A stretch of 64,000 bases of DNA from Pelomyxa schiedti (lineage: Eukaryota > Protista > Evosea). Each line of letters opens with the position of its first letter. The first letter of the stretch is position 1. The translations under genes were made by a program, and so were the position numbers. The notes under the pieces were generated by a model that was not told the origin of the DNA, did no database searches, and saw only the letters and a list, made by a program, of their open reading frames with translations. Positions 2,370 to 20,711 of the stretch are shown piece after piece. The stretch covers positions 62,001 through 126,000 of the forward strand of contig JAHLWZ010000721.1 of assembly GCA_020536535.1 (NCBI GenBank). Reading direction: 5' to 3'.

Positions 2370-3507
2370 ATGGCATCCGTAACCCAAACACCAAATCGAC
2401 AAGACCAACAACACGCCCCTTCCGCCAAGGAGCAGCCACCCACAATGTGGTGTCACAAGTGCTCGCGGACATTCAAGCCGTTGTCACCTGATTCGGCATG
2501 CCCTTACTGCTGGGATGGCTTTGTTGAAGTTGCAACGCCAGAGCAGCTGGAGGCATACAGTAAAGCCGCTCAGCAAAGGGAGCAGCAGCAGCAGCGCAGT
2601 TCAGTTCCGCAAGCATCCCGTCAGAATCAACAGACTCTCCCGCGGAATAACGAGAACGCCACTGCAGCTGCCCCGCAACAGCTGCCGCCCCCAACTAATG
2701 AAGCGTGGAGTGAATCCAATGCTGGCCGGTGGATGCCGCATCTGATGACTGCCTTGAGAAGATACGAAGAGATACAACAAACTCCATCCCCCTCTGCGGC
2801 TCCAGCGGCAGCTCCAACACCAACACCAACAACTGCTCCCACTCCAACGCCAACACCAACACCAACTCCCGAGACTCCAACAACTCCATCGCCATCGAGT
2901 CAACAAGGAGCAGCTCGCCAGCCAATACTAGTCCAATTCGTGACCATCAACTTCTCTGACACAGAAGGCACACCCTCGTCGGGCGAGAGCTCGGCTCAGG
3001 AGAGAAGGCCTCCAGTAACACTCGTGTTTGTGAGTCAGCTTGGAGAAATGCCAGCCGACTCAGTTCCAGGATCAGCACAACCTCCAAGTGGATTCTCCTC
3101 AGGAGATTACATTGCCAGCAACGACGAGTTTCAAGCTCTCCTTAATCACCTATTCAGACAAAGGTTTGCAATTCATTTATCTATAAAGTAATAAGAAACT
3201 AACATCTCTTTTGTGCAGCCAACCACAAGGAGCTCCTCCGGCAACCGAAAAAGCAATTGAAGAACTCACAAGCATACGCGCTACTAAAGAGCAAATCGAA
3301 CAACACGAAGAGTGCTCTATCTGCAAAGACGAGTACGAGGAGGGCGCTGAATTGCTTCAGTTGCATTGCAAACACAGTTATCATCCAGATTGCATCAAGC
3401 ACTGGCTCAAGATGCACAATACATGCCCTGTATGTCGTAGCCCCGTTTCGGCGAATAAACGCGAAGACGAAGAGGTACAGCCAGCCGCACCTGCCGCATC
3501 CAATTGA
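2370..3507 (+). CDS. RNF126/RNF115-like E3 ubiquitin ligase (N-terminal zinc ribbon + C-terminal RING-H2)
   Basis: WCHKC...CPYCWDGFVE zinc ribbon; GDY...LLNHLF..PPA motif; RING-H2 CSIC...CKHSYHPDC...CPVC; one intron at about 3163-3217. Confidence 0.85.
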
Positions 3508-3792
3508 TCGAAATCCATCAATTGATCTCGAATGTAACCAATTACAATTGTGTGTAAATATAAAGATCAGTTTCATTCCTATTTCTATGGTTACCATTTT
3601 CAATGAAAAAACCCGAAAAATCCAGAAGCAGAAGAGTGATGGTTTTCCACAATCAAAACGGCGAAAAAAAGAACTTTTTTTAACGACGACAGGCAGCCGG
3701 AAAAAACCACAACAACAAAAAAAAGAAAACAAACAACAAGCACAAACAACACAAGCCTAGTAAACAACTCAAGATCTAACAAACAACACACA

Positions 3793-4747
3793 ATGGGATC
3801 TGACGCGTCAAAGCCACATGCGCCTAGTGACTCCGAGGTGGATTCTTTGGCTTCCGACCTCAACTTGACAGTTGCGCAAGTAAAGACCATTATGTCGTAC
3901 TGGCCCGCGAGGAAAGACGAGTTGAAGTTGTCTCGTTTCAAGCGCTTCATCGAAACTCTGAGTACGAACATGCCCGACATCGAATTCCTGTCAACCAAGG
4001 GATTTGCCGAACAACTGTTCTGGTTATTCGACAAAGATCACAATGGTACTTTTGCTTTTGTTTGTTTTTTTTCTCCAATCATGTTTAATAGTTAACTGGA
4101 TTTGTAGGCATGGTGTCCAAGCGCGAATTTCTCGCCGGGCTCAGCATTTTGTCTGCTGGTGACCCAACGGAACGTGCGAAACTGTTCTTTGAAGCCTGTG
4201 ATCAAGATGGCAATGGCCAAATCACCAAGATGGAGTTTGTTCAGGCGCTCAGGGTCTCTCTTAATTCCTGCACAAATATTGTCAAGATGCAAATCGAGGC
4301 CTATATCAGGCAAAATCCTGGTAGAAAACTCTCCTGTATGTGGTACCACCCATGCATATCAATCAATTGACCATTCTCGCAGCAAAGCTGATCAGCAAGA
4401 TGCTCGCAACCACAATACACATTGATGCCGACCAGTTCGCTGAATTGGCCTTCCGGGCCGATACGGATCACACTGGGACTCTCTCACTTAGCGAGTGGAT
4501 GACCAGCTGCAATCAAAACGCGGCGATTTCCAGGATTCTGTCATTTGCCTGTGGCGACTTGCTTGTGGACCTCGAAGAAGTCAAGCTCAACACCGACGCT
4601 GGGAAAATAGTCACGGTGCTCACGCAGGAGTACCCCATACTTGACAGGCCCACAATTGAGAACCTACTGCGTGAGTATGACAATGCCGCGGCCTTGCAGA
4701 AACTCAAGCGTAGGTGCCTCACTGGGTCTCTTGGCTTTGGCTTCTAG
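3793..4747 (+). CDS. Recoverin/calcineurin-B-like EF-hand calcium sensor with a possible C-terminal CUE-like domain
   Basis: Myristoylation-type N-terminus MGSDAS; EF-hand loops DKDHNG, DQDGNGQITKME and DTDHTGTLSLSE; at least two short introns. Confidence 0.8.
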
Positions 4748-4888
4748 CCAAGTGCCTTTTGGCGATTTTTTGTGTAAATTACAAGTAACTGTGAGAATAA
4801 TACAAACGGGAAATTTTAACTTATCGTACTTTTTTTTTTAAATTCAACTGAGTCACAGTTGCATCAGGTAAGCGGGGAAGGTAGTGTA

Positions 4889-5889
4889 ATGTCGTTGCTG
4901 GAGAAGGTATACACAGCCAGGAGCGAAATCAAAATTAGTAAGCAGAGGTATGTCGGTGTCTAATTCCGCGGCATTATTCTGTTCGTGCGGGAGTTGTTAC
5001 AAAAGTGCACAGAGTTCTTCAGGCTGAAAGGAAGAAACAGAGAGGGTTATGGTGGTGGTTGGTTGTGGGTGCACTTGGGGAAGCATGGTTTATGGCTGCT
5101 GTAGTTTTGTGCTACCGAGAAGGAATGGCAATTGTAGTGGTGGTAACTAATGGGGTTCCAGCTATGATATTCCCAGTATTGTATGTTGTGCAAGACTGAA
5201 TGCTTTGCGGCTCATTTTACCAGGTGGTATTGCTTTTGGTCTTGCTTTGTACAATGGTGCAAGTTTGCCGTGGATAGAGCAGGTGAAATCCCTCCTTTTC
5301 CTTGTGAATTAACAACAGTACCAAAGTTTTTTCATGCATGCAATATAAAGACCAAGAGCGAGCACTTATCGAACAGATAAAGAGGGATACCAACTTCGAT
5401 GAACTGGCCACAGTATTCTTTGGCCCGGAGTGGAAAACTCCATTATCAAACAGTACTGATGAAACTGCAAAGAGACTCCAAGAATCACAAACTCCGAATG
5501 TTTCAATGCAACAAAGCAACCTAAAAGGTCAGCAGAACACACCAGAACAGCCACAATCCAAGCCAGAGAAAAGTGTGGTTGCCCGTTTTCTTGGATTGCT
5601 TGTTGGAACTGAGGTGAATAATTCCTATGCTCTGATTTGCAGGCACTGCTCTGCCCACAATGGACTGGCCTTAGCTGAAGACTTCCCAAACCTAAGTCAG
5701 TTTGATGAATCTAAATAATACATGCCAGAACCCCGTTGCACACAAATTCTCATACAGTTCTCTTTAGACTTTACCTGTCGGAATTGCGGAAAAATGAACA
5801 CAGCAAAAGAAAGACACACTCAGCTCAAACTGCAGCAACAAATGCACACCACTGAACATTCCAGCAGTAGACTGCCTTGCACCTTGTGA
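4889..5889 (+). CDS. Lunapark-like ER junction protein
   Basis: Two hydrophobic TM segments (5040-5180), a coiled region, and a Lunapark-type zinc finger ALICRHCSAHNGL...FTCRNCGKMN after splicing. Confidence 0.7.
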
Positions 5890-6303
5890 AAGAAATGAAT
5901 TCATCAACCACCAGAACAGCAACAGCTCAGAAAAAGGGAAAACTGAAGATCCCTGATTTGATTTTCGACAAGGGCGGAAAACCATTTGATGTGATTTCCA
6001 GTGCATGTCACTGAATCAGATTTGAAAAAGGGAAACATTGCGTGCAACTCGATTCCGGAAAAAAACTTTGCTCGGCCTTTTCCTGCCACCAGCACGATTC
6101 AAAGGCCCCCCTTGTTGCGTGCAATTTTGGTCGGTCTCTCTCATTGTTCTCGACCCGACCTCGTTTATTTGGTGGTGCTAATCGATTGGCACCTCACCTT
6201 CGTGTTTCAAGTTCTATCCGCTTGATAGTGAATAGAACCCTCCTCGAAAACCAGGAACGAGCATAATCGCTCCACGTTGTAGAACTAAAACCGAAAGCGA
6301 ATC

Positions 6304-9300
6304 ATGCATAGGAGGTCAGACCAAAATTTGCCCGATGTTCAGTACCTACGGCAACAAAAGGTAGTTTTTTTTTTCCCCTCTGCTATTTAGTATACGTTCT
6401 GACACTCTTTTTTTACCACCTTTTTTTTTTTTTTTAAAACAAGGAAATTGTGTCAGGTGAGGTTACAGTGACAATTAATGGAAAGGTTGTACAGTGCCCC
6501 CGTGACTGGACCATACTGAGAGCGTGCTATGAAGTCCATATTAATGTGCCCACATTGTGCCATCATCCATCACTGCCCTCCACTGGAAAGTGTGGTCTTT
6601 GCGTTGTTCAGGTGGAACGGATCCTTCCCTCGCTCCCAACAACCTCTTTGAGTTCTTCTTCTTCTTCACACAAGCTTAACGTCTTGGGAGGGGCCACAGG
6701 CAGTAGCTCCACGGGAGGTTCCGTAGGAGGTTCCACGGGTAGCCTATCAGCACAAACTGCATTGCGCTCTCACTCAACTGCACTTCCAGCCTCACCGTCT
6801 GCAACACCCACGTCTTCTCCTATTCCCTCGCCTACTGTGTCACCAGCGGCCTCTCCTGGTGTGTCCCCATCAGCCTCGCCAAATATCTTTGCGTCACCAA
6901 GTGGTGAATTTACACCAGCTACTGCCCCACCACCTGTTTCATACTTCTCGTTAAATCTGGGACTACACCGTAGTGGCTCTATAGTAGGTGGTGCCAGTGG
7001 GAGTGCTGGTGCTTCGTCTTCTTCCGCTGCATCTGATGGGGATCACAGTAGCTTGTCCAACTCGATCGTGAGTTCAAGTACTACTACTACCCAGCTCCAT
7101 GGAGGAGAGGTGAGGACCTCCGTTGAGTTTGTTAAGGCATGCAAAACTCTTGTAGAAGATGGCATGGTTGTTACTACCAACACTCCTGAAGTGTATTACA
7201 GAGGTACGACTAATTTACAAGAATTTCTGGGTACAAGAACTCTTGAGTCTATATCACCAAGAACTCCTGAAATAGAAGACATTCTTACATTCACTCGCGT
7301 GTGTTTGAATTCCTTATGTTTCTTTATTCTTTATTCATCCTGGATAAAAGAAAACTTCCACTGTTCCTGAGGTCCAGCAGCAGTATGCCCTAGTTCGGGA
7401 CCAGAACCTATGTTGCCTATGCACACGTTGTGTACGTGTCTGCTCTGAAGTTCAGAACATGAATGTACTTCAGCTGAACACTCACAATCCACTTGCTCCA
7501 ATAGCTTTTGAGAAAAACCTTCCCCTTCATGCAACAAGTTGTATTGCCTGTGGCCAATGTGCTGCTGTTTGTCCTACTGGCGCTGTTAGTGAGAGAAATG
7601 ATGTTGATATTGTCTTACGTGAACTGGGTGTGGATAAAACTGCTGCCAACAGAAAGACCGTCATCCTTCAAACAGCACCAACAAGTAGAATTTCTGTTGG
7701 CGAGCTTATGGGGGAAGGAAGTGTTAACATTGACGATAACCCCAATCTATGGCGTCTTGTTGAAGCGGCACATGGAGCTGGGTTCGACTTTGTCTTTGAC
7801 ACAACATTTGCTGCAGACACTTGTGCCACATTGGAAGCAATTGAGTTACTGCAGCGAGTAAAAGCGGGAGGTCCATTCCCTCTTTTTACATCCTGCTGTC
7901 CTGGTTGGGTTCGACTTGTGGAACATGTACTCCCTTGACATTTTTTTTTCTTTTGCCAACAATAGTAGAAATATCCCCACCTGCGAGCCCTTGTTTCTAA
8001 ATGTAGATCACCTATGATGATGCTCGGGTCAATGATTCGTAGCTGGATGAAGAATAACAATGTCCCTCGGACTAAGTACTTTGTAGTTGCAGTTATGCCT
8101 TGTGTTGCTAAGAAAGAAGAAATTAATAAACCTGAGCTCCGTGATTCACAGTGTGTAGTACACCATACTTTATTCTATTCAACAATTGGCAGTGGTCACA
8201 AAGATGTTGACGTTGTATTGACGGTGAGGGAAATGGCACTACTTTTGAAATCCAGACTTAGTCCCTCAGCTTGGAGTTCTTATGCTGGAAAAGGGAAAGC
8301 TTCCTATGACGAACCCTTTGCAGTTGCAAGTGGTGGTGGAACGTTATTCTCATCAAGTGGTGGCGTAACAGTGTGCTAGTTGTACCTCTTTTCAAAATCT
8401 AACTATTACCAATGTAGGAGGCAGCACTTCGAGTGGCGTTCACCTGCCTGACACAGGATAAGGTTTGTTCTTCCAATTAGTATAGAACCTAATAGGACAA
8501 CAAAAAAAAAGTTTCCCAGGGCTGATGTTGACATGTTTGATCAATGTCGTCAAGTCACCAAGTCTGACTCTTGGATTGAAACGGCAATTGACGTGTCGCC
8601 AACAAAACCTGAGAAAAACAAGCAACTTGAAGTTGCTATTATAAGTGGGGCACGCAAAATCCAAGAGTTCCTCTCGTCGCAAGGTCTTGAGGATGCTCAT
8701 CACGCTGGAAAAACAACAGTGAGAAAACATTTTGTTGAGTGCATGGCTTGCCCTGGTGGTTGCATAGGAGGTGGAGGTCAGCCTCGCAGCAATGATCCTT
8801 GCATAATACCCAAGCGTAAATCACAAATCTACAAATTAGCTGCAGCCTGTGAGGAACCCTCCTCTTACTACCAACAACAGCAGTTTCAGGAAACTGAGTT
8901 GTGTGGTGTGGCATCAAAGAAAGCAAGGAAACTTCTTGAATATTACCCACCGGTCTATACACCTCCACCAGCTGCCCTGCGAAAAGGCTTACGCTCAGGT
9001 GATGATTTTATAGGTTCTGTGGGTAATGTGGCGATCCTTTATGGTTCTCAGGGAGGATTCACTGCATCTTATGCATATAAACTTCACAGTGCTCTTGAAA
9101 AAGTTCTTGGGGAGGGTGGTGCGTCAATACACGCCATGGATCATTTCCCAATTCAAGCACTTGGGCATTGTACAACACTGATCCTCCTCACTTCAACATG
9201 GCAAAGTGAGAATAACCGGAATATGCCTTATAATGCCCAGAAGTTTTGGGACTATCTGTGCAATCTACCTCATGACCATCTCAGTAGTTATCTTGCAGGA

Positions 9301-12300
9301 ACTCGGTTCTCTGTTCTTGGTTTTGGGTCAAGTATTTATGACAAGGTATATTTTCTATTGAGAACTGTCACTCTTATTTATTTTTTTTAGTTTTGTGTAT
9401 TCGCTGATCAATTAAATGATATGTTACGACGCCTTGGAGCATCTCCTATGTTGCCTGTGATCAAAATTGATATTGAGCGCCCTGATAAGTAGTACCTGTA
9501 CTTGGAATTTTTGTGTACTGAATGATTGAATAGAGGCCAAAGGCCATTTACCAGATGGATGAAAGAAGTGGAAGTAGTACTGATGCGCACTGAATTACCG
9601 GAACCACAAGTTGCCATCATTCCTGCCATAGCAGGTTTGTATCCGTTTGTAGTTTAAAAACAAACACTTTGCCAGCTGGAAAGCCCCCTAGCAGAGTTTG
9701 CCCTCGAGGGTATAATATGGCCACAGTTAAGTCCATATCGGAGTACAAGAACCTCAGTGGAACAGGAAAAAAATTCTTTTGTGTGCAGCTTTCTGTCTCC
9801 CTCAAGTGTGCTTCTTTCCTGAATCTTCTTGTTGGTGACTGTACTTTTTTTGATACAAAGCCCACAACCTGGCGAGCATCTTTATATCCTGCCTTGCAAC
9901 CCCACCCATGATGTAGAGCAGTTGCTTTCAACCCATTTTCCAGGTGTTGCAAATGTATCAGTTAACCTCTTTGCAACAGGAGGTCTGTTCTACTCTTCTC
10001 ATAATAATCTTTTTAACTCTTTTTGTTAACAGGGAAACCATATGGCCATTTCCCAACCCACATAAGTGTCAAACAGTTGTTTGAACAATTTTTGGACCTG
10101 TATGCCAAACCACATAAAAAATTCTTAGAAGCCTTGGTTGACGCAAATACACAGGACCAGTAAGTAACTTGTCTCTTGAATTTCTGACACTGTTAAGTTC
10201 AACACAACCCCCCTTCGACTTTTCCAAGGACTGTACCTACATGAGCATTCTAATGCAAATGAAAGTTGTCCCTTCATTAGAAGTGCTAGTTTCTGTTATA
10301 CCCCCTCTTTTACCTCGTTGTTACACTCCACTTTTTGTGGAAAATTGCCCACCGAACTGCCTATTCATATGTGTGAAACAAATTGAAAATGGCTTATGTT
10401 CTCAATTTTTGATAAACGGCAGTATGTTGTCTGGTCATAGACATTTTTTCTGAAAAAAAAAAAAAGAGAAAGGTGACAAACTACCTGTCTTCTTGGGGCA
10501 TAGTGATTTCCCACAGCCCAATCTTCTAGATAGCGAACCTGAAGCCCCAAAAACAGCACCCAAACTGTTTCCAATGTCCCCTAAACAGATGACTCCCAAT
10601 CGACGGACAGCAGCCACCCCACAACTGCCTTCAAGATTCCAATCGCGGCTTGGTTCTGTAGCCGATGCCACCAACCCACCTGATTGTACGGCACTCACAC
10701 CCTCTGTAAAGAATACATTCTCTTCTTCGCGTCAGCTGGAAGTAAACCCCCCACGACTCTTGATCCTTCATCAAAATAGCACATTTGCTGCTTCATCCTC
10801 AGCTTCCCTCGAAGAAGCTGCTCCTGTATCACTCTCCAAAATTACACAAGTGCACTTATTCATTTATTTATAGCATCTGGATGATCCCACACAAACTCCG
10901 CCTGAAATTTTTCAGAAATTTTCAGAGTACTTTAAGCACTTTGAGGAGCCTGACACTAACGCAAACGTTCGATGGACAACCCTTGCCACACCTGAAGGAG
11001 AACCGGTACGAACTTTCCTTTTTTGCAACAAAAAATCTAACAGAAAAAAAGGGTTCCTTAGGTGTTTCTCGGCCATTCACCATCCATGGCGGAACCGTTT
11101 TCAAACTTGTTCAATACCTGACACATTCCGAGGAATGTGGTTTGTTACCCCCAAATTTTTTTTCCTCTCTCAAAATATTTAGACCCAGATTTCTCCCAAT
11201 CGTTTTTTGTTTCATATGTTGCTTTCGTTGAGGAATCCAAACTCATTGATATGCTAATTGCCCGGTTCATCAACCTGCTGCCATTACAAAATCTAACAGG
11301 CTTGCAGTTTCTTCATTCGAAACCCAGAAACCCTTGATCCTTCCATGTTTTCCAATATTAGAACGACTGTTAGAGCGAGAGTTATCAATGTTCTGAAGAC
11401 TATATATGAAGACATTTCTGATAACCCGGAACTTGTGCAAAAAGTAACAGATGCCCTGACACTTTTCTCTGGTTACACAACTGTGGCTGGGGCCGTTCTA
11501 AAAAAGCTGGTAATAATGTCATTTCCTTTTTTCTTACTTAAGCATGTAAACATTTGGCCATGATAGCAAAACTCGGTTCCACCTGTCAACCTAACTGCCG
11601 ACTGTCCACCTCCCATTGTACTCTCACCTGTGGTGTGCTCCATTTTAGATATGCACCCAGAGGAGCTGGCAAGACAGATTTCCATCGTAGAATGGAATCT
11701 ATGGAAAAAAATCAAGCCAAAAGGTACAGAAAACGGAAGAATAATTCTAATGATCTTCCAGAATTTGTGACCAATTCCTGGAACAAAACAACGAAAGGAA
11801 GACTTGCGCCAAACATAACCGCCATGATATTGGAATCCAATAAAGTAATACTTGTGTTGGTTCAAGTGAACTCTTACAACCACCTTAAAGAGAACATTGT
11901 GGGCCATAACTGAAGTGATAAGTATTGCAACTGAAAAGGATCGAGCTTTAGCAATACATCGCTTGATACTTGTTGCTGATGTATATCTCTCTTTTTTTTG
12001 GGCTTTTTTTTTTTAATCTGTTTAGATTTGCTATAAAATAAGGAACTTCAATGGATTGTTAGAAATAGTATCGGGACTTCAAAACTCCGCAGTCCACAGA
12101 TTAAAGAAATCATGGGCGGTATTTTTTAATGCGTTTTGGTTGCAAAAGTAACACTAACACTACTAGTATGTCCCGGCGCAATCACAGGAACTCTTCGAAA
12201 AATATTGTGTCCTTCTTGATCCATCTGCTAATTTTGCTGCTTACCGAAATGTCATTAAATCTGCTGTGGCTCCTTGCATTCCGCACCTAGGTTAACTTAA

Positions 12301-12649
12301 AGTACAATTGCCGTTTTACTGACAACTCCACCCATTTGTGGTTACAGGAATGATTTTAACTGATGTAACCTTTGCAAACGACGGAAACCCCGATTTGATA
12401 GCAGGGACATCACTTGTGAACTTTGCGAAATGGAGAAGTATGAGCGGAATCGTCAAGTATCTACTACACTAAACACCCGGTTGTTTCTTACACATCTACA
12501 GAGGATTGAAAGTGTGGCAGGTTGTGGGTCCAAATTTCAGGGAGGTGGAAGCCATTCAAGCATATTTGAGGATCTATAAACCAAAAACTGCTGATGACGC
12601 CTTTGACATCAGTAAATGCCTGGAGCCTACAACTACCCTCACCATGTAA
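6304..12649 (+). CDS. [FeFe]-hydrogenase - flavodoxin - FAD-binding - RasGEF (REM+CDC25) fusion protein, multi-exon
   Basis: 2Fe-2S (TLC..GKCGLC..AC); 2x4Fe-4S (CCLCTRCVRVC, CIACGQCAAVCP); H-cluster motifs TSCCPGW (7888), MPCVAKKEE (8095), ECMACPGGCIGGGGQP (8737). Flavodoxin ILYGSQGG..LLTST..FSVLGFGSSIY; FAD-domain PGEHLYILPCN..IPPLLPRCY..GLCSQFL..GDKLPVF. REM FEEPD..IHGGTVFKLVQYL..DPDF; CDC25 PEELARQI..NFNGLLEIVSGL..CIPHLG..DGNPD..VNFAK. At the junctions traced, in-frame GT-AG splicing links the parts; stop TAA at 12647-12649. Confidence 0.85.
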
Positions 12650-13033
12650 ATACCCTTTTCACCTTTCCTTTTCCTGAACGCTTCAACAGAGCCGCTATAA
12701 AGGCACAAAACTCTTCCATTGACAAAAAATCAAAGGTTACTTCTTTTTTCTACTTGTATGCTCTCACCAACCCTCAAACAAGGAAATTTTTGTGAAGGAT
12801 GAAGCTCTTCTATCCAAGGCAAAGAAGGCGGCACTCAAGTCTTAGTGTAAATTAAGTACATTTGTATTGAACAACCTAAGGTTCTGTCCCTCCTTCACCT
12901 AACCAAGACTCACCTATTCCAGAACTATGCATTACATGAACTTTGCTTTTTCGGCAAGGAAATCACCAACATTGGTATTGTTAAAAAAGAGACATTCGCT
13001 TTGTTTCTTGTAGAAGTGCTTTTTTTTTCCCCA

Positions 13034-15738
13034 TTAGTTGACAGTAGAGTGTGTCAAAAGTCTTTTGGCTGCTTCTTCCACTTTTTTCTGTGCACGGTGC
13101 AGCATCCATAGGATAATCAAACAAACAACAGCTGATCCTGCGAGTAATGTAACACCAGCAATTAATCCCATTGGGTAATCGGGAAGATCAAACCAGGCAT
13201 TGCAATCTTGTGTGAATAGTTCAATGGTGTCAGCCTCCCTGTTATAATTTAGTTGCGGAAATCGAGATTGAGGCGTGGATACGGGCAGTAGTCCACATCG
13301 TAGAGATAGCACTGGGGATCCAAAACTTCGGGCCAGCAGATGTCTCCATTATCAGTTTCGAAAGTGACAGTCATCTCGCGCTGGTATCCAGTGTCTTGTG
13401 AACAATCTGTTTCAATCATATAACACTCGGTTACAATAACAGTAGTCTCCACAGCCCTGCTGTCATCAAGCGCTGGCACAAGAGATAGCACGGCCACTAG
13501 GCACGTGGCTACACAAAATCCAGCTAAGAGCAGCCCAAATACGAGCTCGAGTATTCGTATGCGCTAGAGATTGTAAGGTGTAATAGTGTATCTACAGTAG
13601 TGGCACACCAGAGTGGCCTTCTTCTGGGCGGCAGTGATTGCGTTTGTAACTGCTGGTGATGGTTTTTTCCTTGCAGGACGCACCACTGGAGGACGGGGAT
13701 AATGAGTCGCACTACAGGATGAATCACTATAACTGGTTGAGAAATTGAAAGGCTTACATTCCAGTGGCTTGTTTGTGTAACCATAACCACAAGTGGTCAT
13801 GAATCTGAACATAACCGTGAATGACAGAATTGAGCCTTATAGTATCGGCCACAACTGAGAAAAGGAATAGGTACAAAAAGGTCATGGCGTTGTAGGTTGC
13901 TAAATTGCATCAGGTGGTAGGAGACAGAAAGGTTACGTTACAAAGACAACGAAAGTGGTTAATCTCCAGAGACATAATGAAGATGCTGGCGAGCATAGCA
14001 AAAAAGTTCAATGTTACATCTAATTTCTTGTTACATCTCTTGAAATGCAATGTAAATAGGGTACCACACTGAGCGAAAAAAGCTGTGAGAAAAAAGTGCG
14101 CCAAAACACCGCACGCACTACCACTCAGACCAGTAACAATAGCGACAAGATTAAAGTATTCTTTTTTCAAACAGGCAACAACAAGCAGAATCTAATAAGG
14201 GATGAAAAAGCACAAGGAGAGTACTTAGATACCACTTCATAGAAGACCTGAACTACATGGTGATAGATATGTTGCGAATCAATTGAGGAATTGCGGAGTT
14301 CTTTACGGCAAGACCTGGGTGCTATGAGACAAGTAATGCACATGGTGAAGCCAGTGATGCAGTGCTCCAGCTTGGGGTAGTGAGGTGAAACCTTTGAGTA
14401 CTTAGAAGTTGGCCGGCCAGTTAGAGAAAACAAACCCTCAGGGTTTTCTCTCGTGTTGACGTAACCACAGCCTCTTCGGGTCTGGATAACATAAAGCAAT
14501 CAAAGGCACTGTATCCTACAAATGGAAGGGGCCACAGGCTAAGCAATATCCTTGTACAAGCCAAGGTCATGTCATTCCATTCTATCAGTTCTTGTTCGGC
14601 GCAGTTTTCCTCTGCGATTTTGAGGGGACAGTACTTTCACTCAGTTCACCATACCTTGGGCTAAATCGACAAGATCGATAAGGGATAGAATTGCACAATA
14701 CAGATAGAAACCTCCTGCAATAATCATAAAACACCTGTCAAGTAACAGATAAGACATATAAATACAAGTAATCCCTTGCGCACCCAGTGTACATAAAGAT
14801 AAACCACTGTCGCACTCTCCCCCATAAAAAAGCGAATGCCACAAGGGCATTTAAGAATACAAGAGCAGAAGGAAGCCACTCAGATACACTTTCAAAGCTT
14901 CCAACAATAGACTTGTAGTCTTCCTATAACATTGGGGTAGTAAATAAAATACGGACAGCTATCACGCAGCGAAATTCTGTTGAATATCGTGTTTTGGATT
15001 CAGTGGTTTTTTTTGGTGTGTGTGTATGTGTGTGTTTCCGCGCATATATACCTCCAGGCATCTCATTAGCAACTGCACAAACAAACACACAGCCGCTACT
15101 CCACAAGCCAAAACGAGGGTCCACCTGAACCTGTGATACATGAAAGTCTGCTTGATTCCAGTAACCCCCGGCACCACCGGCGGTGCCTTGAGCCTGTGAT
15201 CTGGCGCACCCCCGTGCCCGCCCCCGCCTCCGTGGCTCGCAGGGGGCTCCCCAATGGCCGCGGATTCCCCGGGCGGGGGGTCAATCGCCCCCGCTGAGGG
15301 AGCACCATCGGGTCCGCTGAGGTTGTCGCGGGACATGCTGATGGCCTCGGGGTCCGTGATGGAGCCGTAGCCGTCGGGGTGGAGCAGGGGCTGGGCCTCG
15401 TCGTAGCTGACGGGTGCTGTGGGGGTGTAAGTGGCACCTTGGTCCGCGGTAAGAAGGAGTGGCTCCGGGACTGGTGGGGCCGTGGGGTAGGAGTAGTCAT
15501 CCGCCGAGTTGGGGGCAAGCCTGCTTGTGGGTGATGAATACGACGCCGAACCGGCTTCTTCTCCTTCTGCTGCTGCTGGTGATTTCGGAGATGTCATCGG
15601 CGCCAGGGTGACGAGTTCCTGCTCTTGTTGTTTGAGTTCAGCATGCTGAGGGGGCACTTGGTCGTGTAGTTGTTGTGGCGGCGGGGGGGCCTGAGGGTTG
15701 TCAACCTCGCCAGGCGAAGGGGATGTGGGGTGTGACAT
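13034..15738 (-). CDS. Hypothetical multi-pass membrane protein with a Pro-rich N-terminus (multi-exon; could be two genes)
   Basis: A series of minus-strand ORF fragments with many hydrophobic segments, joinable by GT-AG introns (e.g. about 13240-13280). No family recognised. Confidence 0.5.
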
Positions 15739-16247
15739 TTGCTCAGCGCTGAGAAAAAGTGTCACTTTTGCTTGTGTTTTTACGGCAGCCGGACGAAACT
15801 TGGCGGTTTCTTACGGTACTTAACGAGAAGGCAGTGCCACGAACAAACGAAAAGGGACACGAGCCATTTTTTTTTTTTGTTTTGGGTGCCCCTTTTATTT
15901 CATCTGTTTCTTCAACCGCCTTCAACGGCAGTGACGCAATCAGGGGATGTGGTGCGACCTCAAAAGACTTGCACAACCTCCAACGTTGACTGTTTTGATG
16001 AACAATCTGAGCGACGAAGCTGAGGTGCCACCCCTAGAACAACCCTACTGATACTAATGAACAAGAAGGGGCTGTTCCATCTCAGTCAAACTCGTTTCCC
16101 AAGATACCAGCAAAGACAATGCAAACAAAGGGAGAAAATCCGGAGAATCTCCATCCAGGTTGGTTGGGTTTGGCTTCGTGGTTGTGGCCGTTTCGTAGAC
16201 GTATTCAACGACTAACGAACACCAACCAACCAACAACAACGCAAGCC

Positions 16248-19200
16248 ATGGACGACGTCGAGCTGTCGATGGCGGAGCACGAGGTCGAGATGGTGGCAGT
16301 CGGCGCTGCCGTTCTTGCCGACGCCGCGCCCCCCTCGCCGACCCCCACGTGCGCGTGCAACTGCGGCGGCCGAGTTGGTGACTCGCTGTTCAGCGGCACC
16401 GCCGTCGCCGCCCCGGCCGCGGCAGCCACTTCGGCTTCTACTTCTGCGTCTTCTTCGCAGTCGTCGAGGGCGGCGATTTGTTGCTGTGGGTGTGGGGGCG
16501 GGGGAGACGTCATTGAAGCAGGGGAGTGTGAGGGAGGGGGAGGGAGTGAGATGGACACTCGCACAAGGGGGTGCTTGTGTAGGGCATGGAGGAAACTCAC
16601 AAGAATGGTTTTTTTTTTTTTTTTTTCTTCTTGTTTATGTTGCTGTATTATGGGATGTTAATGACAATTGTGAGAAATGTTTGTTGGTTGGCGTTTTCTA
16701 ATGTGGCGGGATAAGGGAAGCGGAGTGGGAGTTTTGAATATCTTTAGTCTGAGATTTGAGAACGATTATGTGGAACAAATGTTGAAACATCTTCCCCTTC
16801 TTTTCTCAGTTGTTGGTTATGGCCCTTTTATAGACACTATGGTAAAGGTATCACCAGTATGCCACCTTACACCTTGATTGTGGATTCAAGAAGCAAAACA
16901 CGATTCTATTATTCCTCTTGATGCTACAAGCCATAGCCTTCCTCGTTGTCAGGTAAATTACTACTACCACAAAAATCCCCTTGATGAAGCAAAATCAGTG
17001 GAAAGAGGAGAGAAATTTACTCAATAGTATTGCCCCTCATCAGTAGCCCAGTTGCTGTTACAACCCTTATGTCCTGCTTGCCACTTATCAGTCATTCTAA
17101 GAGATCCAAGCTACTTCTTACCCAACACACATTTGTATTCTCTTCATTGAGTTATCCTGGTCACTTACAGCTGCGATTACAGATTATACTGGAGGGTGTC
17201 TGCCTCATTGCAATTGCCGTAGGGCAACCTTACCTGGTTCCTGCTTGGAACCCGTCAAAGGACATTGTAGCATTGACAGTAAATGATGTCATTGCACTGG
17301 GTTCCTCTGCAGTTGTCTTCTTTTCTGTTACTTTGTTACTCACTGCCGTTAATGTGAGATCTACTGCAGGTATGGAGCCAACACTTTTTCCGTTCTCATT
17401 GGTTTCTCCCATACAACAGTGGGATGTGTATGTGTTGCCCTTGCAATTGGTATTCTTGAAGTTGCGCTGTGGAACGCACAATTGTGTGATATTGTGCCAT
17501 TTGCATTTTTTATCATTGCAGGGGCCTCCTTGTGGTCAATGCAAGCATATCAATTACGTGAGTACCCAAGGGGAAGTGGGGGCATAGAAACTTACCAAAT
17601 AAAAGACATCTTCCATAGACTAGACTATGTTTCCAAGACTTGCCTTCAATTTGAACAGCGTAAATTGGAGGAAGAACAGCAAAGGAATATGGACTTACTT
17701 CACATGATCTTGCCACCAGAAATTGCAGAGAAGTTGAAATCTTGCATGGGAAGAGGTAAACGCCTCCAAATAGAGTCTCTATTGGATGACATTTAAATCC
17801 ACAGATAACCTTGCCACAAACCACCCAATGGTATCAGTACTGTTTCTTAATTTCAATGGACTCGAGGGACTTTCCGCTAAAGATACAGTTTTAGTTCTTG
17901 GGAAACTATTTGTTTCTGTAGATAATGCTTGTTCTTTGTAAGGTTCTATTGTTATTTTTTTATACTTACATAGGAGAGGTTTCACATAGAAAAGATAAAA
18001 ACGATAGGAACAGCAATAATGGCGGCAGTAGGAATACCGCGGTAATACCGCAACTTACGTGATTTCTTTCTTTTTACTCACAGAAAAGAGCAAACTGCGA
18101 TGATGCTACCAGGGCTGCCTTATTTGCATTACATGTACAGCACATAGCAACCCTCTTTGCTCAGCAGAGAGGATTAGATATTTCTGTGAAAGTTGGGATT
18201 GCTTCAGGGTCAGTTACAAGTGGTGTAATTGGTACTTCTCTTTCTACTGGCACAAAACCTTATCCCCTAAGCAGGGTTCGAGAAACCAAAATTTGGTATT
18301 TCACCATGATATTTATTGTTTTCAATTCTTCCTTTACAACACCCAGACATTTTTGGAGATACAGTCAATACAAGTGCCAGAATGATGTGTGTACAAAATA
18401 TACTTTTGACCTTTTTTAACATCCCCCAGGCAGACTTGCCCTCGAGGATCCATACAACTTACAGATTTTACCGTACACCAACTTTCTGGTGGTTTAAAGC
18501 TTGCAAAGTCACCAACCCCAGTTTTTGTTAAAGGTAAAGTACTTGAACAATCAATGCAGAATATTTATTTACCATTTGACAGGAAAGGGGGATATGGTAA
18601 CCTATTTTCTGCTTGGTTCTGAGGGTGATGTTCACCTTCAAGTTTCACGGTTGGTTATTCTCCTTCTTAAACTTCTCTTACATCTTATTAGAGAGAATAT
18701 GTCTCAGGACTCCATACTGTAGGAAAATTGTTCCCCAACCCATTTCTCAAATTTTGATAGGACTCCCTCATACCCCAAGGCACTACTGAAAACAAATAAT
18801 AAACTCATCAGTGCGTAAAGTCATCCCACATAAACACTTTCCAACCACCTAAGGTGAATCTGACTTCACAACATTGGAGCATGTACGCCTGCAACCTTTA
18901 CCATCGTTAAATCGAATCTTGCTTCGTTTCTCCAATATTGAAGCAGAATTGTAAATTACTTTGTCTTCTTTTCTGAAATAATTGTTTTTTTCCTGGTTTC
19001 CCCTTGTACTAATTTCCACCAGTTTGCATAATTACTTCACCGTTTTCTTTGTCACTCTAAGACCTCATATGCTAGTACTTGGTGTATGTACTGCCACCTC
19101 TGTCCTCGTGTCCTACTTGGTTGGGTGCTTCTCTATCAATTATGCAATGCTAGCAGAGACCCCCACCCTCATAATAGTTCTATTATGCTTTACACCGTAC

Positions 19201-20711
19201 GTCAAGTGTTTCTGCAATTTACATGTAGATAACCTTATGCAGCTTGCTGACACGATTTCCTTGCCAAGTTCATTACTCAATCTTTGTCATTTGCATTTCG
19301 ACGTCTTTAGCTTGGCTTGTTGTCTATTCACTTGGGTGGACAAATGATGCCTGGCCAGTATGTAGGGCTGAATTTCCAAGGGTTAACCATTCCTAGCTCA
19401 TGGTCATTGGTCACCTGGCTGTACTACACAGCTTCTGCCGAGTTCTTTTCCGATTTGTAACATGTGCTAGCATTATAATTGCTCCGGTTGCCATCATTTG
19501 TGGAATAGGTATGAGTGCCTTTAGTACCTCCTTGTTAAGATTATGAAAGTAATCGATGACTGGCCGTGGGGTCGAATACTTGTTTCCATGATCACTATTT
19601 TGCTTGCTCTGGCTTATGGGCACTACGCCACTGAAAAAGCCATGCGAATCAACTTCGGGCTTGAAAAACTTTTTGCTGAAAAGAAACAGTTACTATTAGA
19701 AGTGCGAAGCTATTATTAATAACCTCTTATTCTACTCACTTGGAAAAGGAGCAAGAAGCTTCCAACCAGCTTTTATTAAGCATACTTCCCCCGCAGATAC
19801 TGCAAGAATTGACTGCATCAGAAGAGACTGATGAAGTTATTGCAGAAACTGTCTCGAGTGGCTCTCTTCTAATGGCCGATATTGTTGGTAGGTATGAACC
19901 GAGGCGAGATTAATGAAACATCTGGGCAGGTTTTACAACAATATGCGATTCAATTCCTGCCCATACTGTGGTTACGATGCTGGATACCTTATTCCGCGAG
20001 CTTGATTCTTCAATAGCTGGGCTAATTGCAAGTGGAGTACAAAAGTTGAAAACCATTGGCATGTTCCCTGAATTTTGGCAAAATAGGCTGAACCTTTCTC
20101 ACAAAGGTGATGCTTACGTTGTTGGTGCCAATCTGCCTTTTTGTCCTTGTGTTGATCACGCAACAAAGCTCACACAAGTTCGTAACATCGCTTTGATCTG
20201 AATTTATATCTTTCTGAAAGGTAGCCCAAGCAATGGTACGTGCAATTGCTACTGTCAACAGAGACCATCGAAAAGGACTTCTGGAAAATCTACCAGAAAT
20301 CAGAATGAGGATTGGCGTGCACTCTGGCCCTGTGGTACAAGAAACAAACAAGAAACAAACAAGAAACATTACAACTAACACCCCTGAACAAACACAAAAA
20401 GCTAGCTGGTTTGTCCAACTTCCCCTCTTGTATGTCATTCTTTCTCCAGGAGTGATACGAATGAAGAGTCTATCTTTTGACTGCTGGGGACCCTCAGTGT
20501 ATATTGCTGATGCCCTTCAGACATCTGGTGCAGCTAACCAGATTCACATTTCCGGTAACACCACCCCCACTGGAGTACATTAGCTCACATAACTAAATAC
20601 AACTAAGATTCCGTCAAAGAACTGTTGGATGATAGACTATTTTCTTGTACACCGGCTCCAGATATGCCTTATGGGGACTCTGTCTACAAAACTTATTTCG
20701 TGGCTGGATAG
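16248..20711 (+). CDS. Transmembrane class III nucleotide (probably adenylyl) cyclase with two TM clusters and two catalytic domains
   Basis: Domain 1: LLHMILPPEIAEKL, EKIKTIG, VKVGIASG, FDIFGDTVNTSARM, KGKGDMVTYFL. Domain 2: LLLSILPPQI, MADIVGFT, QKLKTIGDAY, RMRIGVHSGPV, FDCWG. Confidence 0.9.

What the first reader, a model, noticed from the sequence alone, without database searches (positions are those of the whole stretch)
6304..12649. [FeFe]-hydrogenase fused through a flavin module to a SOS-like RasGEF: candidate H2/redox sensor driving Ras signalling
Seen: one in-frame spliceable gene carries Fe-S domains, an H-cluster domain with intact TSCCPGW / MPCxxKxxE / ExMACxxGCxxGGGQP motifs, a flavodoxin domain, an FAD-binding domain, a Pro/Ser linker, and then REM and CDC25 domains. 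The exon that ends the FAD domain (GDKLPVFLGHSDFPQP, about 10470-10520) runs on without a stop to a phase-0 intron ending at 10873, then enters FEEPD..GGTVFKLVQYL, the SOS-type REM entry. Established: hydrogenase-diflavin (CysJ/CPR-like) fusions occur in anaerobic protists, and bacterial group C [FeFe]-hydrogenases are putative sensors linked to signalling domains. Inference: here the electron-exit domain is replaced by a eukaryotic GTPase exchange factor, so H2 level or redox state could gate Ras activation, for example for chemotaxis or interaction with H2-consuming symbionts. I know of no described example, but could not search.
Basis: partly seen in the sequence, partly recalled or inferred. 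Interest (0 to 1): 0.96.

Follow-up and report, generated by a model that had tools for sequence, protein, structure and literature searches.

The report
Hydrogenase fused to a Ras activator
An oxygen-avoiding amoeba has a gene that joins a complete hydrogen-converting enzyme to a switch that turns on Ras signalling proteins; it belongs to an undescribed family of such enzyme-plus-signalling fusions and may let these cells sense hydrogen gas or redox state, which is inferred from sequence and not yet tested.

Summary
The fusion is real at DNA level. Window 6304-12845 is a stop-free 27-exon gene (1766 aa) identical to the public Pelomyxa schiedti protein KAH3758981.1 (Pelo_9198), published only as an energy-metabolism hydrogenase. 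Order: 2Fe-2S, two 4Fe-4S, H-cluster domain, flavodoxin, FAD domain, linker, REM, CDC25. The NAD(P)-binding domain is cut off at its hinge. One exon carries both the FAD-domain end and the start of the RasGEF module; an intact paralog repeats the junction; the next intron matches one in the donor ankyrin-RasGEF genes. No RNA contig spans the junction. The hydrogenase belongs to a long-branch clade (100/100) from Pelomyxa, Mastigella, Mastigamoeba and environmental samples whose members all lack the NAD(P) domain and mostly carry a protein kinase instead; RasGEF is a later swap. H-cluster ligands and the group A proton path are kept, so it is not group C. Best reading: a dead-end cofactor chain reporting H2/redox state to Ras (0.55, untested). 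No paper describing it was found. This scan noted the paralog and the kinase fusions on other DNA of this genome.

The parts
6304..12845 (+). Whole gene, 27 exons, 1766 codons; = KAH3758981.1 / Pelo_9198 of Pelomyxa schiedti
6459..7172 (+). 2Fe-2S domain (aa 25-262) split by a ~160-aa Ser/Pro/Gly-rich insertion (6621-7106) between the third and fourth Cys
   Evidence: Pfam Fer2_4 E 9.6e-15, two stretches
7399..7602 (+). Two 4Fe-4S motifs (aa 321-388)
   Evidence: Pfam Fer4/Fer4_7; intron 7299-7350 RNA-supported
7654..8775 (+). H-cluster domain (aa 406-719): four ligand Cys (487, 541, 711, 715), K544, proton path C486-E466-S506-E469-R473
   Evidence: PF02906 207 bits; alignment to CpI; site table; model matches CpI, rmsd 2.6
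8776..8943 (+). Diverged small-subunit-like segment (aa 720-775); no PF02256 hit, as in the whole clade
9022..9570 (+). Flavodoxin (FMN) domain, aa 802-954; phosphate loop and both aromatic positions kept
   Evidence: PF00258 57 bits; introns 9346-9390 and 9489-9533 RNA-supported
9717..10522 (+). Connecting plus FAD-binding domain, aa 990-1195, ending at the hinge where the NAD(P) domain would begin
   Evidence: PF00667 36.5 bits, over cut-off; profile aligns to NOS/CPR reductases up to the hinge; cysJ model matched only to position 440 of 597
10467..10825 (+). Junction exon 14: last strand of the FAD domain, ~70-aa Pro/Ser/Thr linker, and the first motif of the RasGEF module, in one stop-free frame of 119 codons
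10826..10873 (+). Phase-0 intron holding the TAG at 10871-10873; same position and phase in the paralog and in two ankyrin-RasGEF genes; not covered by RNA
10874..11497 (+). Pre-REM helices and REM domain (aa 1297-1460)
   Evidence: PF00618 53.6 bits; RNA contig 11114-11619
11633..12613 (+). CDC25-type RasGEF catalytic domain (aa 1487-1720)
   Evidence: PF00617 183 bits, full profile; Cdc25 E 5.5e-47; model TM 0.71-0.77 to SOS1 REM-CDC25
12614..12845 (+).

Best explanation
One cytosolic polypeptide whose N-terminal 1195 residues are a group A [FeFe]-hydrogenase wired to FMN and FAD domains, and whose C-terminus is a REM-CDC25 exchange factor. Shown: the architecture, loss of the NAD(P) domain, retention of cofactor ligands, membership of a clade in which that slot holds signalling domains. 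Inferred: with no NAD(P)H site the Fe-S/FMN/FAD chain cannot run the NAD(P)H-H2 reaction; it equilibrates through the H-cluster with dissolved H2 (and possibly ferredoxin or O2), and the redox-dependent open/closed movement known for diflavin reductases releases or masks the GEF, switching a Ras-family GTPase. It would work like a bacterial sensory hydrogenase but arose independently from a metabolic enzyme.
For: Stop-free model equal to the public protein; both modules in one exon; intact paralog with the same junction and codon-type divergence across it; orthologous intron in donor genes; no in-frame start for a separate RasGEF after the TAG. Clade 100/100: 0 of 18 members have the NAD(P)-domain glycine motif, 17 of 22 ordinary fusions do; the catalytic YSIAS motif is changed in all 13 members scored while R-x-Y and the G-x-C-S FAD contacts stay. 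Outputs are kinase (intact motifs in 6 of 8), RasGEF or Ig plus propeller-like; 1602- and 1692-codon intron-free ORFs join hydrogenase to kinase. H2 potential from 1e-2 to 1e-5 atm is -355 to -266 mV, the range of diflavin semiquinone/hydroquinone couples (from memory). The host depends on low H2 kept by a methanogen (PMC10579272).
Against: No biochemical data. No RNA across the junction. A ~70-aa low-complexity linker separates FAD domain and GEF, so direct allostery is not assured; domain packing in the model is unsure (pTM 0.55). The maturases are predicted organellar (PMC8887013), so cytosolic H-cluster loading is unproven. A conserved Tyr/Phe of the GEF hairpin is His in both fused copies. 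The active site lacks the hallmarks of characterised sensors.
Confidence: 0.55

Rival explanations
1. Tethered bifunctional protein: a working hydrogenase that exchanges electrons with another partner (ferredoxin at the N-terminal clusters, a haem or flavin protein at FMN), joined to a GEF that is controlled by other inputs; the fusion co-locates H2 metabolism and Ras signalling, e.g. at membranes around symbionts.
For: Full group A proton path and relay clusters kept; long flexible linker and Ser-rich insertion with basic-Ser motifs conserved between paralogs suggest phosphoregulation.
Against: Does not explain why every clade member lost exactly the NAD(P) domain and gained a signalling domain there, with at least three different outputs; two ordinary NAD(P)-domain hydrogenases exist in the genome for metabolism.
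Confidence: 0.18
2. Redox or oxygen sensor without a 2Fe subcluster (Nar1-like use): only the 4Fe-4S clusters and flavins are loaded, and O2 or cell redox, not H2, is the signal.
For: Maturases predicted in the organelle (PMC8887013); exposed FAD should react with O2 (inference); long stem branch and changes at E278, I276, G418, T420 (CpI numbers) in all 15 members; TIGR02512 score under cut-off.
Against: Residues that matter only for the 2Fe subcluster and proton transfer (K358, C299, M353, M497, F417, E279, E282, R286) are kept in 14-15 of 15 members.
Confidence: 0.13
3. Signal runs the other way: Ras binding or phosphorylation controls hydrogenase activity.
For: REM domains can bind Ras-GTP allosterically (established for SOS); Ser-rich insertion inside the 2Fe-2S domain.
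Against: Catalytic output domains at the C-terminus, swapped freely between kinase and GEF, fit an input-output grammar with the hydrogenase as input.
Confidence: 0.08
4. Two adjacent genes or an assembly/annotation artefact.
For: No RNA contig between about 9560 and 11113; DNA contigs spanning the locus may be the source of the assembly; the public model is a prediction (Augustus, PASA, EVM).
Against: Both modules share exon 14; independent paralog on another scaffold; orthologous intron; no conserved start codon for a separate RasGEF; two runs give the stretch in one contig.
Confidence: 0.05

Closest known systems
CysJ/CPR-fused group A [FeFe]-hydrogenases of anaerobic protists (Trichomonas, Pygsuia, Stygiella; PMC4989108, PMC10579272)
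   Same: Same N-terminal clusters, H domain, flavodoxin and FAD domain in the same order; nearest relatives by sequence.
   Different: NAD(P)-binding domain absent, YSIAS motif changed, small-subunit segment diverged, RasGEF appended; separate long-branch clade.
Bacterial putative sensory [FeFe]-hydrogenases, groups C and D (TmHydS, TamHydS; PMC10055695, PMC10407848; subtypes C1-C3 in PMC5037454)
   Same: Hydrogenase coupled to signalling (kinases, phosphatases, chemotaxis proteins).
   Different: Those replace the proton-transfer Cys by Ala and carry a PAS domain; this keeps Cys and both Met, has a diflavin arm and a eukaryotic output in the same chain.
Group 2b regulatory [NiFe]-hydrogenase with histidine kinase (PMC5037454)
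   Same: Proven logic of H2 oxidation controlling a signalling enzyme.
   Different: Unrelated enzyme class, multi-subunit, two-component output.
REM-CDC25 RasGEFs (SOS1, Cdc25; Pelomyxa ankyrin-RasGEFs)
   Same: Complete REM and CDC25 domains, SOS-like fold; 52-53% identity and shared introns with ankyrin-RasGEFs.
   Different: Input module is a hydrogenase-diflavin instead of ankyrin, DH-PH or cNMP domains; hairpin aromatic replaced by His.

Membership tests
Group A [FeFe]-hydrogenase | Three H-cluster motifs with four ligand Cys and the CN-binding Lys | tested here: met
   C487, C541, C711, C715, K544
Group A [FeFe]-hydrogenase | Proton path C299-E279-S319-E282-R286 (CpI numbers) | tested here: met
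   all five kept; path described in PMC10407848
Group A [FeFe]-hydrogenase | Curated family score (TIGR02512) and small-subunit domain PF02256 | tested here: not met
   343 bits against cut-off 406; no PF02256 hit; best family is still group A/A6
Group A [FeFe]-hydrogenase | H-cluster loading and H2 turnover | not testable with these tools
   needs protein
CysJ/CPR-fused hydrogenase | Flavodoxin and FAD-binding domains after the H domain | tested here: met
CysJ/CPR-fused hydrogenase | NAD(P)-binding domain with its glycine motif; RxYSIAS motif | tested here: not met
   no PF00175; cysJ model ends at 440/597; motif absent; RCYTP instead
Group C/D sensory [FeFe]-hydrogenase | Cys299 replaced by Ala, Met353/Met497 replaced | tested here: not met
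   C486, M539, M709 kept (features)
Group C/D sensory [FeFe]-hydrogenase | PAS domain (group C) after the H domain | tested here: not met
   no PAS hit
Group C/D sensory [FeFe]-hydrogenase | Placement in the group C/D clade | not tested
   no group C/D sequence was in my trees; all nearest hits were group A
CDC25-family RasGEF | REM plus complete CDC25 domain and fold | tested here: met
CDC25-family RasGEF | Helical-hairpin catalytic residues | tested here: inconclusive
   motif intact but the usual Tyr/Phe is His in both fused paralogs, Tyr in the ankyrin-RasGEFs
CDC25-family RasGEF | Nucleotide exchange on a Ras-family GTPase | not testable with these tools
   needs assay
SOS | Histone-fold, DH and PH domains before REM | tested here: not met
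   absent

The most novel reading that the evidence does not exclude
Archamoebae evolved a family of eukaryotic hydrogen receptors: a metabolic hydrogenase-diflavin enzyme lost its NAD(P) domain, became a dead-end H2 'voltmeter', and was coupled in one chain to kinases and, in Pelomyxa, to Ras exchange factors, giving direct H2 control of eukaryotic signalling in a host that depends on methanogenic symbionts.
Probability: 0.4. Interest if true: 0.96.

Novelty: new variant of a known kind. Interest (0 to 1): 0.88.

Why it matters
No eukaryotic H2 sensor turned up in the papers searched, and sensory hydrogenases are described only from prokaryotes. This gives a concrete, testable candidate with a standard read-out (nucleotide exchange or kinase activity), and an independent origin of hydrogenase-based signalling from a group A enzyme. 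It bears on how anaerobic protists manage syntrophy with methanogens. It also changes the published metabolic picture: four of the six long P. schiedti hydrogenases, described as having an NADH pocket (PMC10579272), lack that domain and carry a kinase or RasGEF instead. The architecture is undescribed and fails the membership tests of both nearest families; I file it as a new variant rather than categorically new because hydrogenase-linked signalling is a known idea in bacteria and function is untested.

Tried and rejected
RNA: the only RNA holders are assembled contigs with partial cover; none bridges 9560-11113. A 24-nt junction intron (donor 10850) was rejected as shorter than any other intron here; donor 10826 fits size, the paralog and the donor genes. 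Stop at 12649 rejected. Separate RasGEF gene rejected: no in-frame ATG after 10873 before the REM core; the two ATGs in exon 14 are not at matching positions in the paralog. A hydrogenase-RasGEF outside P. schiedti was sought and not found; these searches are length-limited and Archamoebae are thinly sampled, so this is not absence. Ten paper searches found no description; Smutna et al. on the Trichomonas fusion was not held, and most subscription papers are not covered. The C-termini of the Mastigella members stayed unnamed (Ig-like domain, then weak propeller signal). Exon 14's 3' motif alone is a weak match (E 0.15); it counts only as a collinear extension seen in three donor proteins.

Full report
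Source. The genome has 52,367,397 bases in 5337 contigs, matching Pelomyxa schiedti (52.4 Mb, 5337 scaffolds; PMC8887013). A search with exon 7 returned a 1766-aa protein, 100% identical at 632-909, which is KAH3758981.1, Pelo_9198, listed as 'Fe-hydrogenase, energy metabolism'; 'RasGEF' does not occur in that paper's supplements.

Gene model. I built an exon model by hand before seeing the public protein: 27 exons, 6304-12845, all introns GT-AG, 38-83 nt, no stop. All 27 exons match the public protein at the expected residue. Eleven introns are supported by RNA contigs, in the hydrogenase, flavodoxin and RasGEF parts; none covers about 9560-11113. Two runs hold the 5951-base stretch in one contig, but they may be the source of the assembly. 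The public model is a prediction aided by transcripts, so it agrees with my model but is not proof.

Is it one gene? Four lines say yes. (a) Exon 14 (10467-10825) is one open frame of 119 codons; its first 19 residues align with the end of the FAD domain in every full-length clade member, and its last 28 extend collinearly the match to three Pelomyxa ankyrin-RasGEFs. (b) A second locus (contig C930) has the same domains in the same order (77% identity in the H domain), intact throughout, with the same junction exon, a phase-0 intron at the same place, and differences concentrated at third codon positions in exons 13-15. (c) The introns at 10826-10873 and 11006-11051 fall at the same residues and phase as introns in two ankyrin-RasGEF genes, so they came in with the GEF module. 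(d) After the TAG at 10871 there is no in-frame ATG before the REM core. I put the fusion at about 0.95.

Anatomy. Pfam gives 2Fe-2S, two 4Fe-4S, H domain (207 bits), flavodoxin, FAD-binding, REM and CDC25 (183 bits). Mapped on CpI, the four H-cluster cysteines, K358, M353, M497, F417, V423 and the proton path C299-E279-S319-E282-R286 are kept; the model superposes on CpI at 2.6 A. The flavin arm aligns with NOS and P450 reductases exactly to the hinge before the NAD(P) domain and stops; the cysJ model matches to 440 of 597. FMN and FAD contact motifs are kept but YSIAS is YTPLF. The GEF folds like SOS1 REM-CDC25 (TM 0.71-0.77); its hairpin has His where relatives have Tyr, so activity or specificity may be altered.

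Family. The nearest proteins are not ordinary hydrogenases but other fusions with the same truncated flavin arm: Pelomyxa KAH3758890.1 and KAH3732501.1 (kinase follows), Mastigamoeba balamuthi models with kinases, two Mastigella eilhardi transcripts with an Ig-like and a propeller-like region, and environmental contigs with kinases. Three of the latter are intron-free ORFs of 1089-1692 codons that join the parts in one frame, one seen in two samples. In a careful tree these form one side of a 100/100 branch about 1.0 substitutions per site long; the RasGEF protein is sister to the Pelomyxa kinase fusions (100/99) inside kinase-bearing members, so kinase output looks older and RasGEF a swap in the Pelomyxa line (the larger quick tree agrees; roots are midpoint only, no group B-D rows, C930 left out because it has no protein id). 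None of 18 members has the NAD(P) glycine motif, 17 of 22 ordinary fusions do. All 15 scored members differ at E278, G418 and T420, which are invariant or nearly so in 52 other sequences, and have Ala/Ser at I276. What these changes do is unknown; a paper search on them found nothing.

Mechanism. Shown: intact cofactor ligands, no NAD(P) site, a signalling enzyme in its place, conserved across three genera. Inferred: the chain cannot do the NAD(P)H-H2 reaction of its ancestors and should equilibrate with H2; the H+/H2 potential at 1e-2 to 1e-5 atm is -355 to -266 mV, overlapping flavin couples of P450 reductase (from memory; loss of the NAD(P) domain may shift them). Diflavin reductases open and close with redox state (established knowledge), which offers a way to gate the domain attached at the FAD C-terminus. 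P. schiedti needs its methanogen to keep H2 low (PMC10579272), which gives a reason to sense it. Weak points: a 70-residue flexible linker, unsure domain packing (pTM 0.55), organellar maturases, no assay. I give redox/H2 gating 0.55, tethering 0.18, a 2Fe-less O2/redox sensor 0.13, reverse control 0.08, artefact 0.05.

Comparison. It descends from CysJ-fused group A hydrogenases (PMC4989108) but fails their NAD(P)-domain test. It would work like group C/D or group 2b sensors but lacks their hallmarks. Searches pairing hydrogenase with RasGEF, exchange factor, kinase fusion or eukaryotic sensing found no description; the library omits most subscription papers. The published statement that the long P. 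schiedti hydrogenases have an NADH pocket holds for two of six loci (C594, C579) and not for four. Earlier notes of this scan on the paralog and kinase fusions were read after these results and are not independent support.

Verdict. Observation confirmed; fusion very likely; architecture undescribed; sensing plausible and directly testable but unproven. Interest 0.88.

Noticed in passing
G000 C930 about 14000-20450 (-), locus L024: Second intact hydrogenase-FMN-FAD-RasGEF gene with the same junction; not returned as a protein by the homology searches.
   Followed up: yes
L027 (C730) and L025 (C1164): Two hydrogenase-FMN-FAD-kinase genes; in C1164 an N gap with a duplicated stretch cuts the public model short of its kinase.
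   Followed up: partly
L023 (C594), L028 (C579): Only two of the six long hydrogenases keep the NAD(P)-binding domain, against the published description.
   Followed up: yes
window 6966 and 10634: Basic-Ser motifs (HRSGSI, SRLGSV) are conserved between the two paralogs inside otherwise divergent low-complexity stretches; possible phosphorylation sites.
   Followed up: no
window 12272-12290: GEF hairpin reads PCIPHLG in both fused paralogs, PCIPYLG in the ankyrin-RasGEFs.
   Followed up: partly
L031 (P0009): Clade member on a poly(A)-ended contig whose kinase lacks the HRD and DFG motifs: a pseudokinase output.
   Followed up: partly
P0162, P0157 (Mastigella eilhardi): Clade members ending in an Ig-like domain, a propeller-like region and helices, with no kinase; output unidentified.
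   Followed up: partly
P0165, P0166, P0238 (Anaeramoeba flamelloides): A separate group of WD40-hydrogenase-flavodoxin fusions without FAD domain.
   Followed up: no
P0002 (Cyanophora paradoxa), P0163 (Mastigamoeba): A 4122-aa model with many hydrogenase repeats, and a hydrogenase-kinase model running into an MFS transporter; both may be merged gene models.
   Followed up: no
window 2370-5890: Upstream neighbours are ordinary: RING-H2 protein (3211-3507), EF-hand protein (about 3793-4747), lunapark-like gene (to about 5890).
   Followed up: partly
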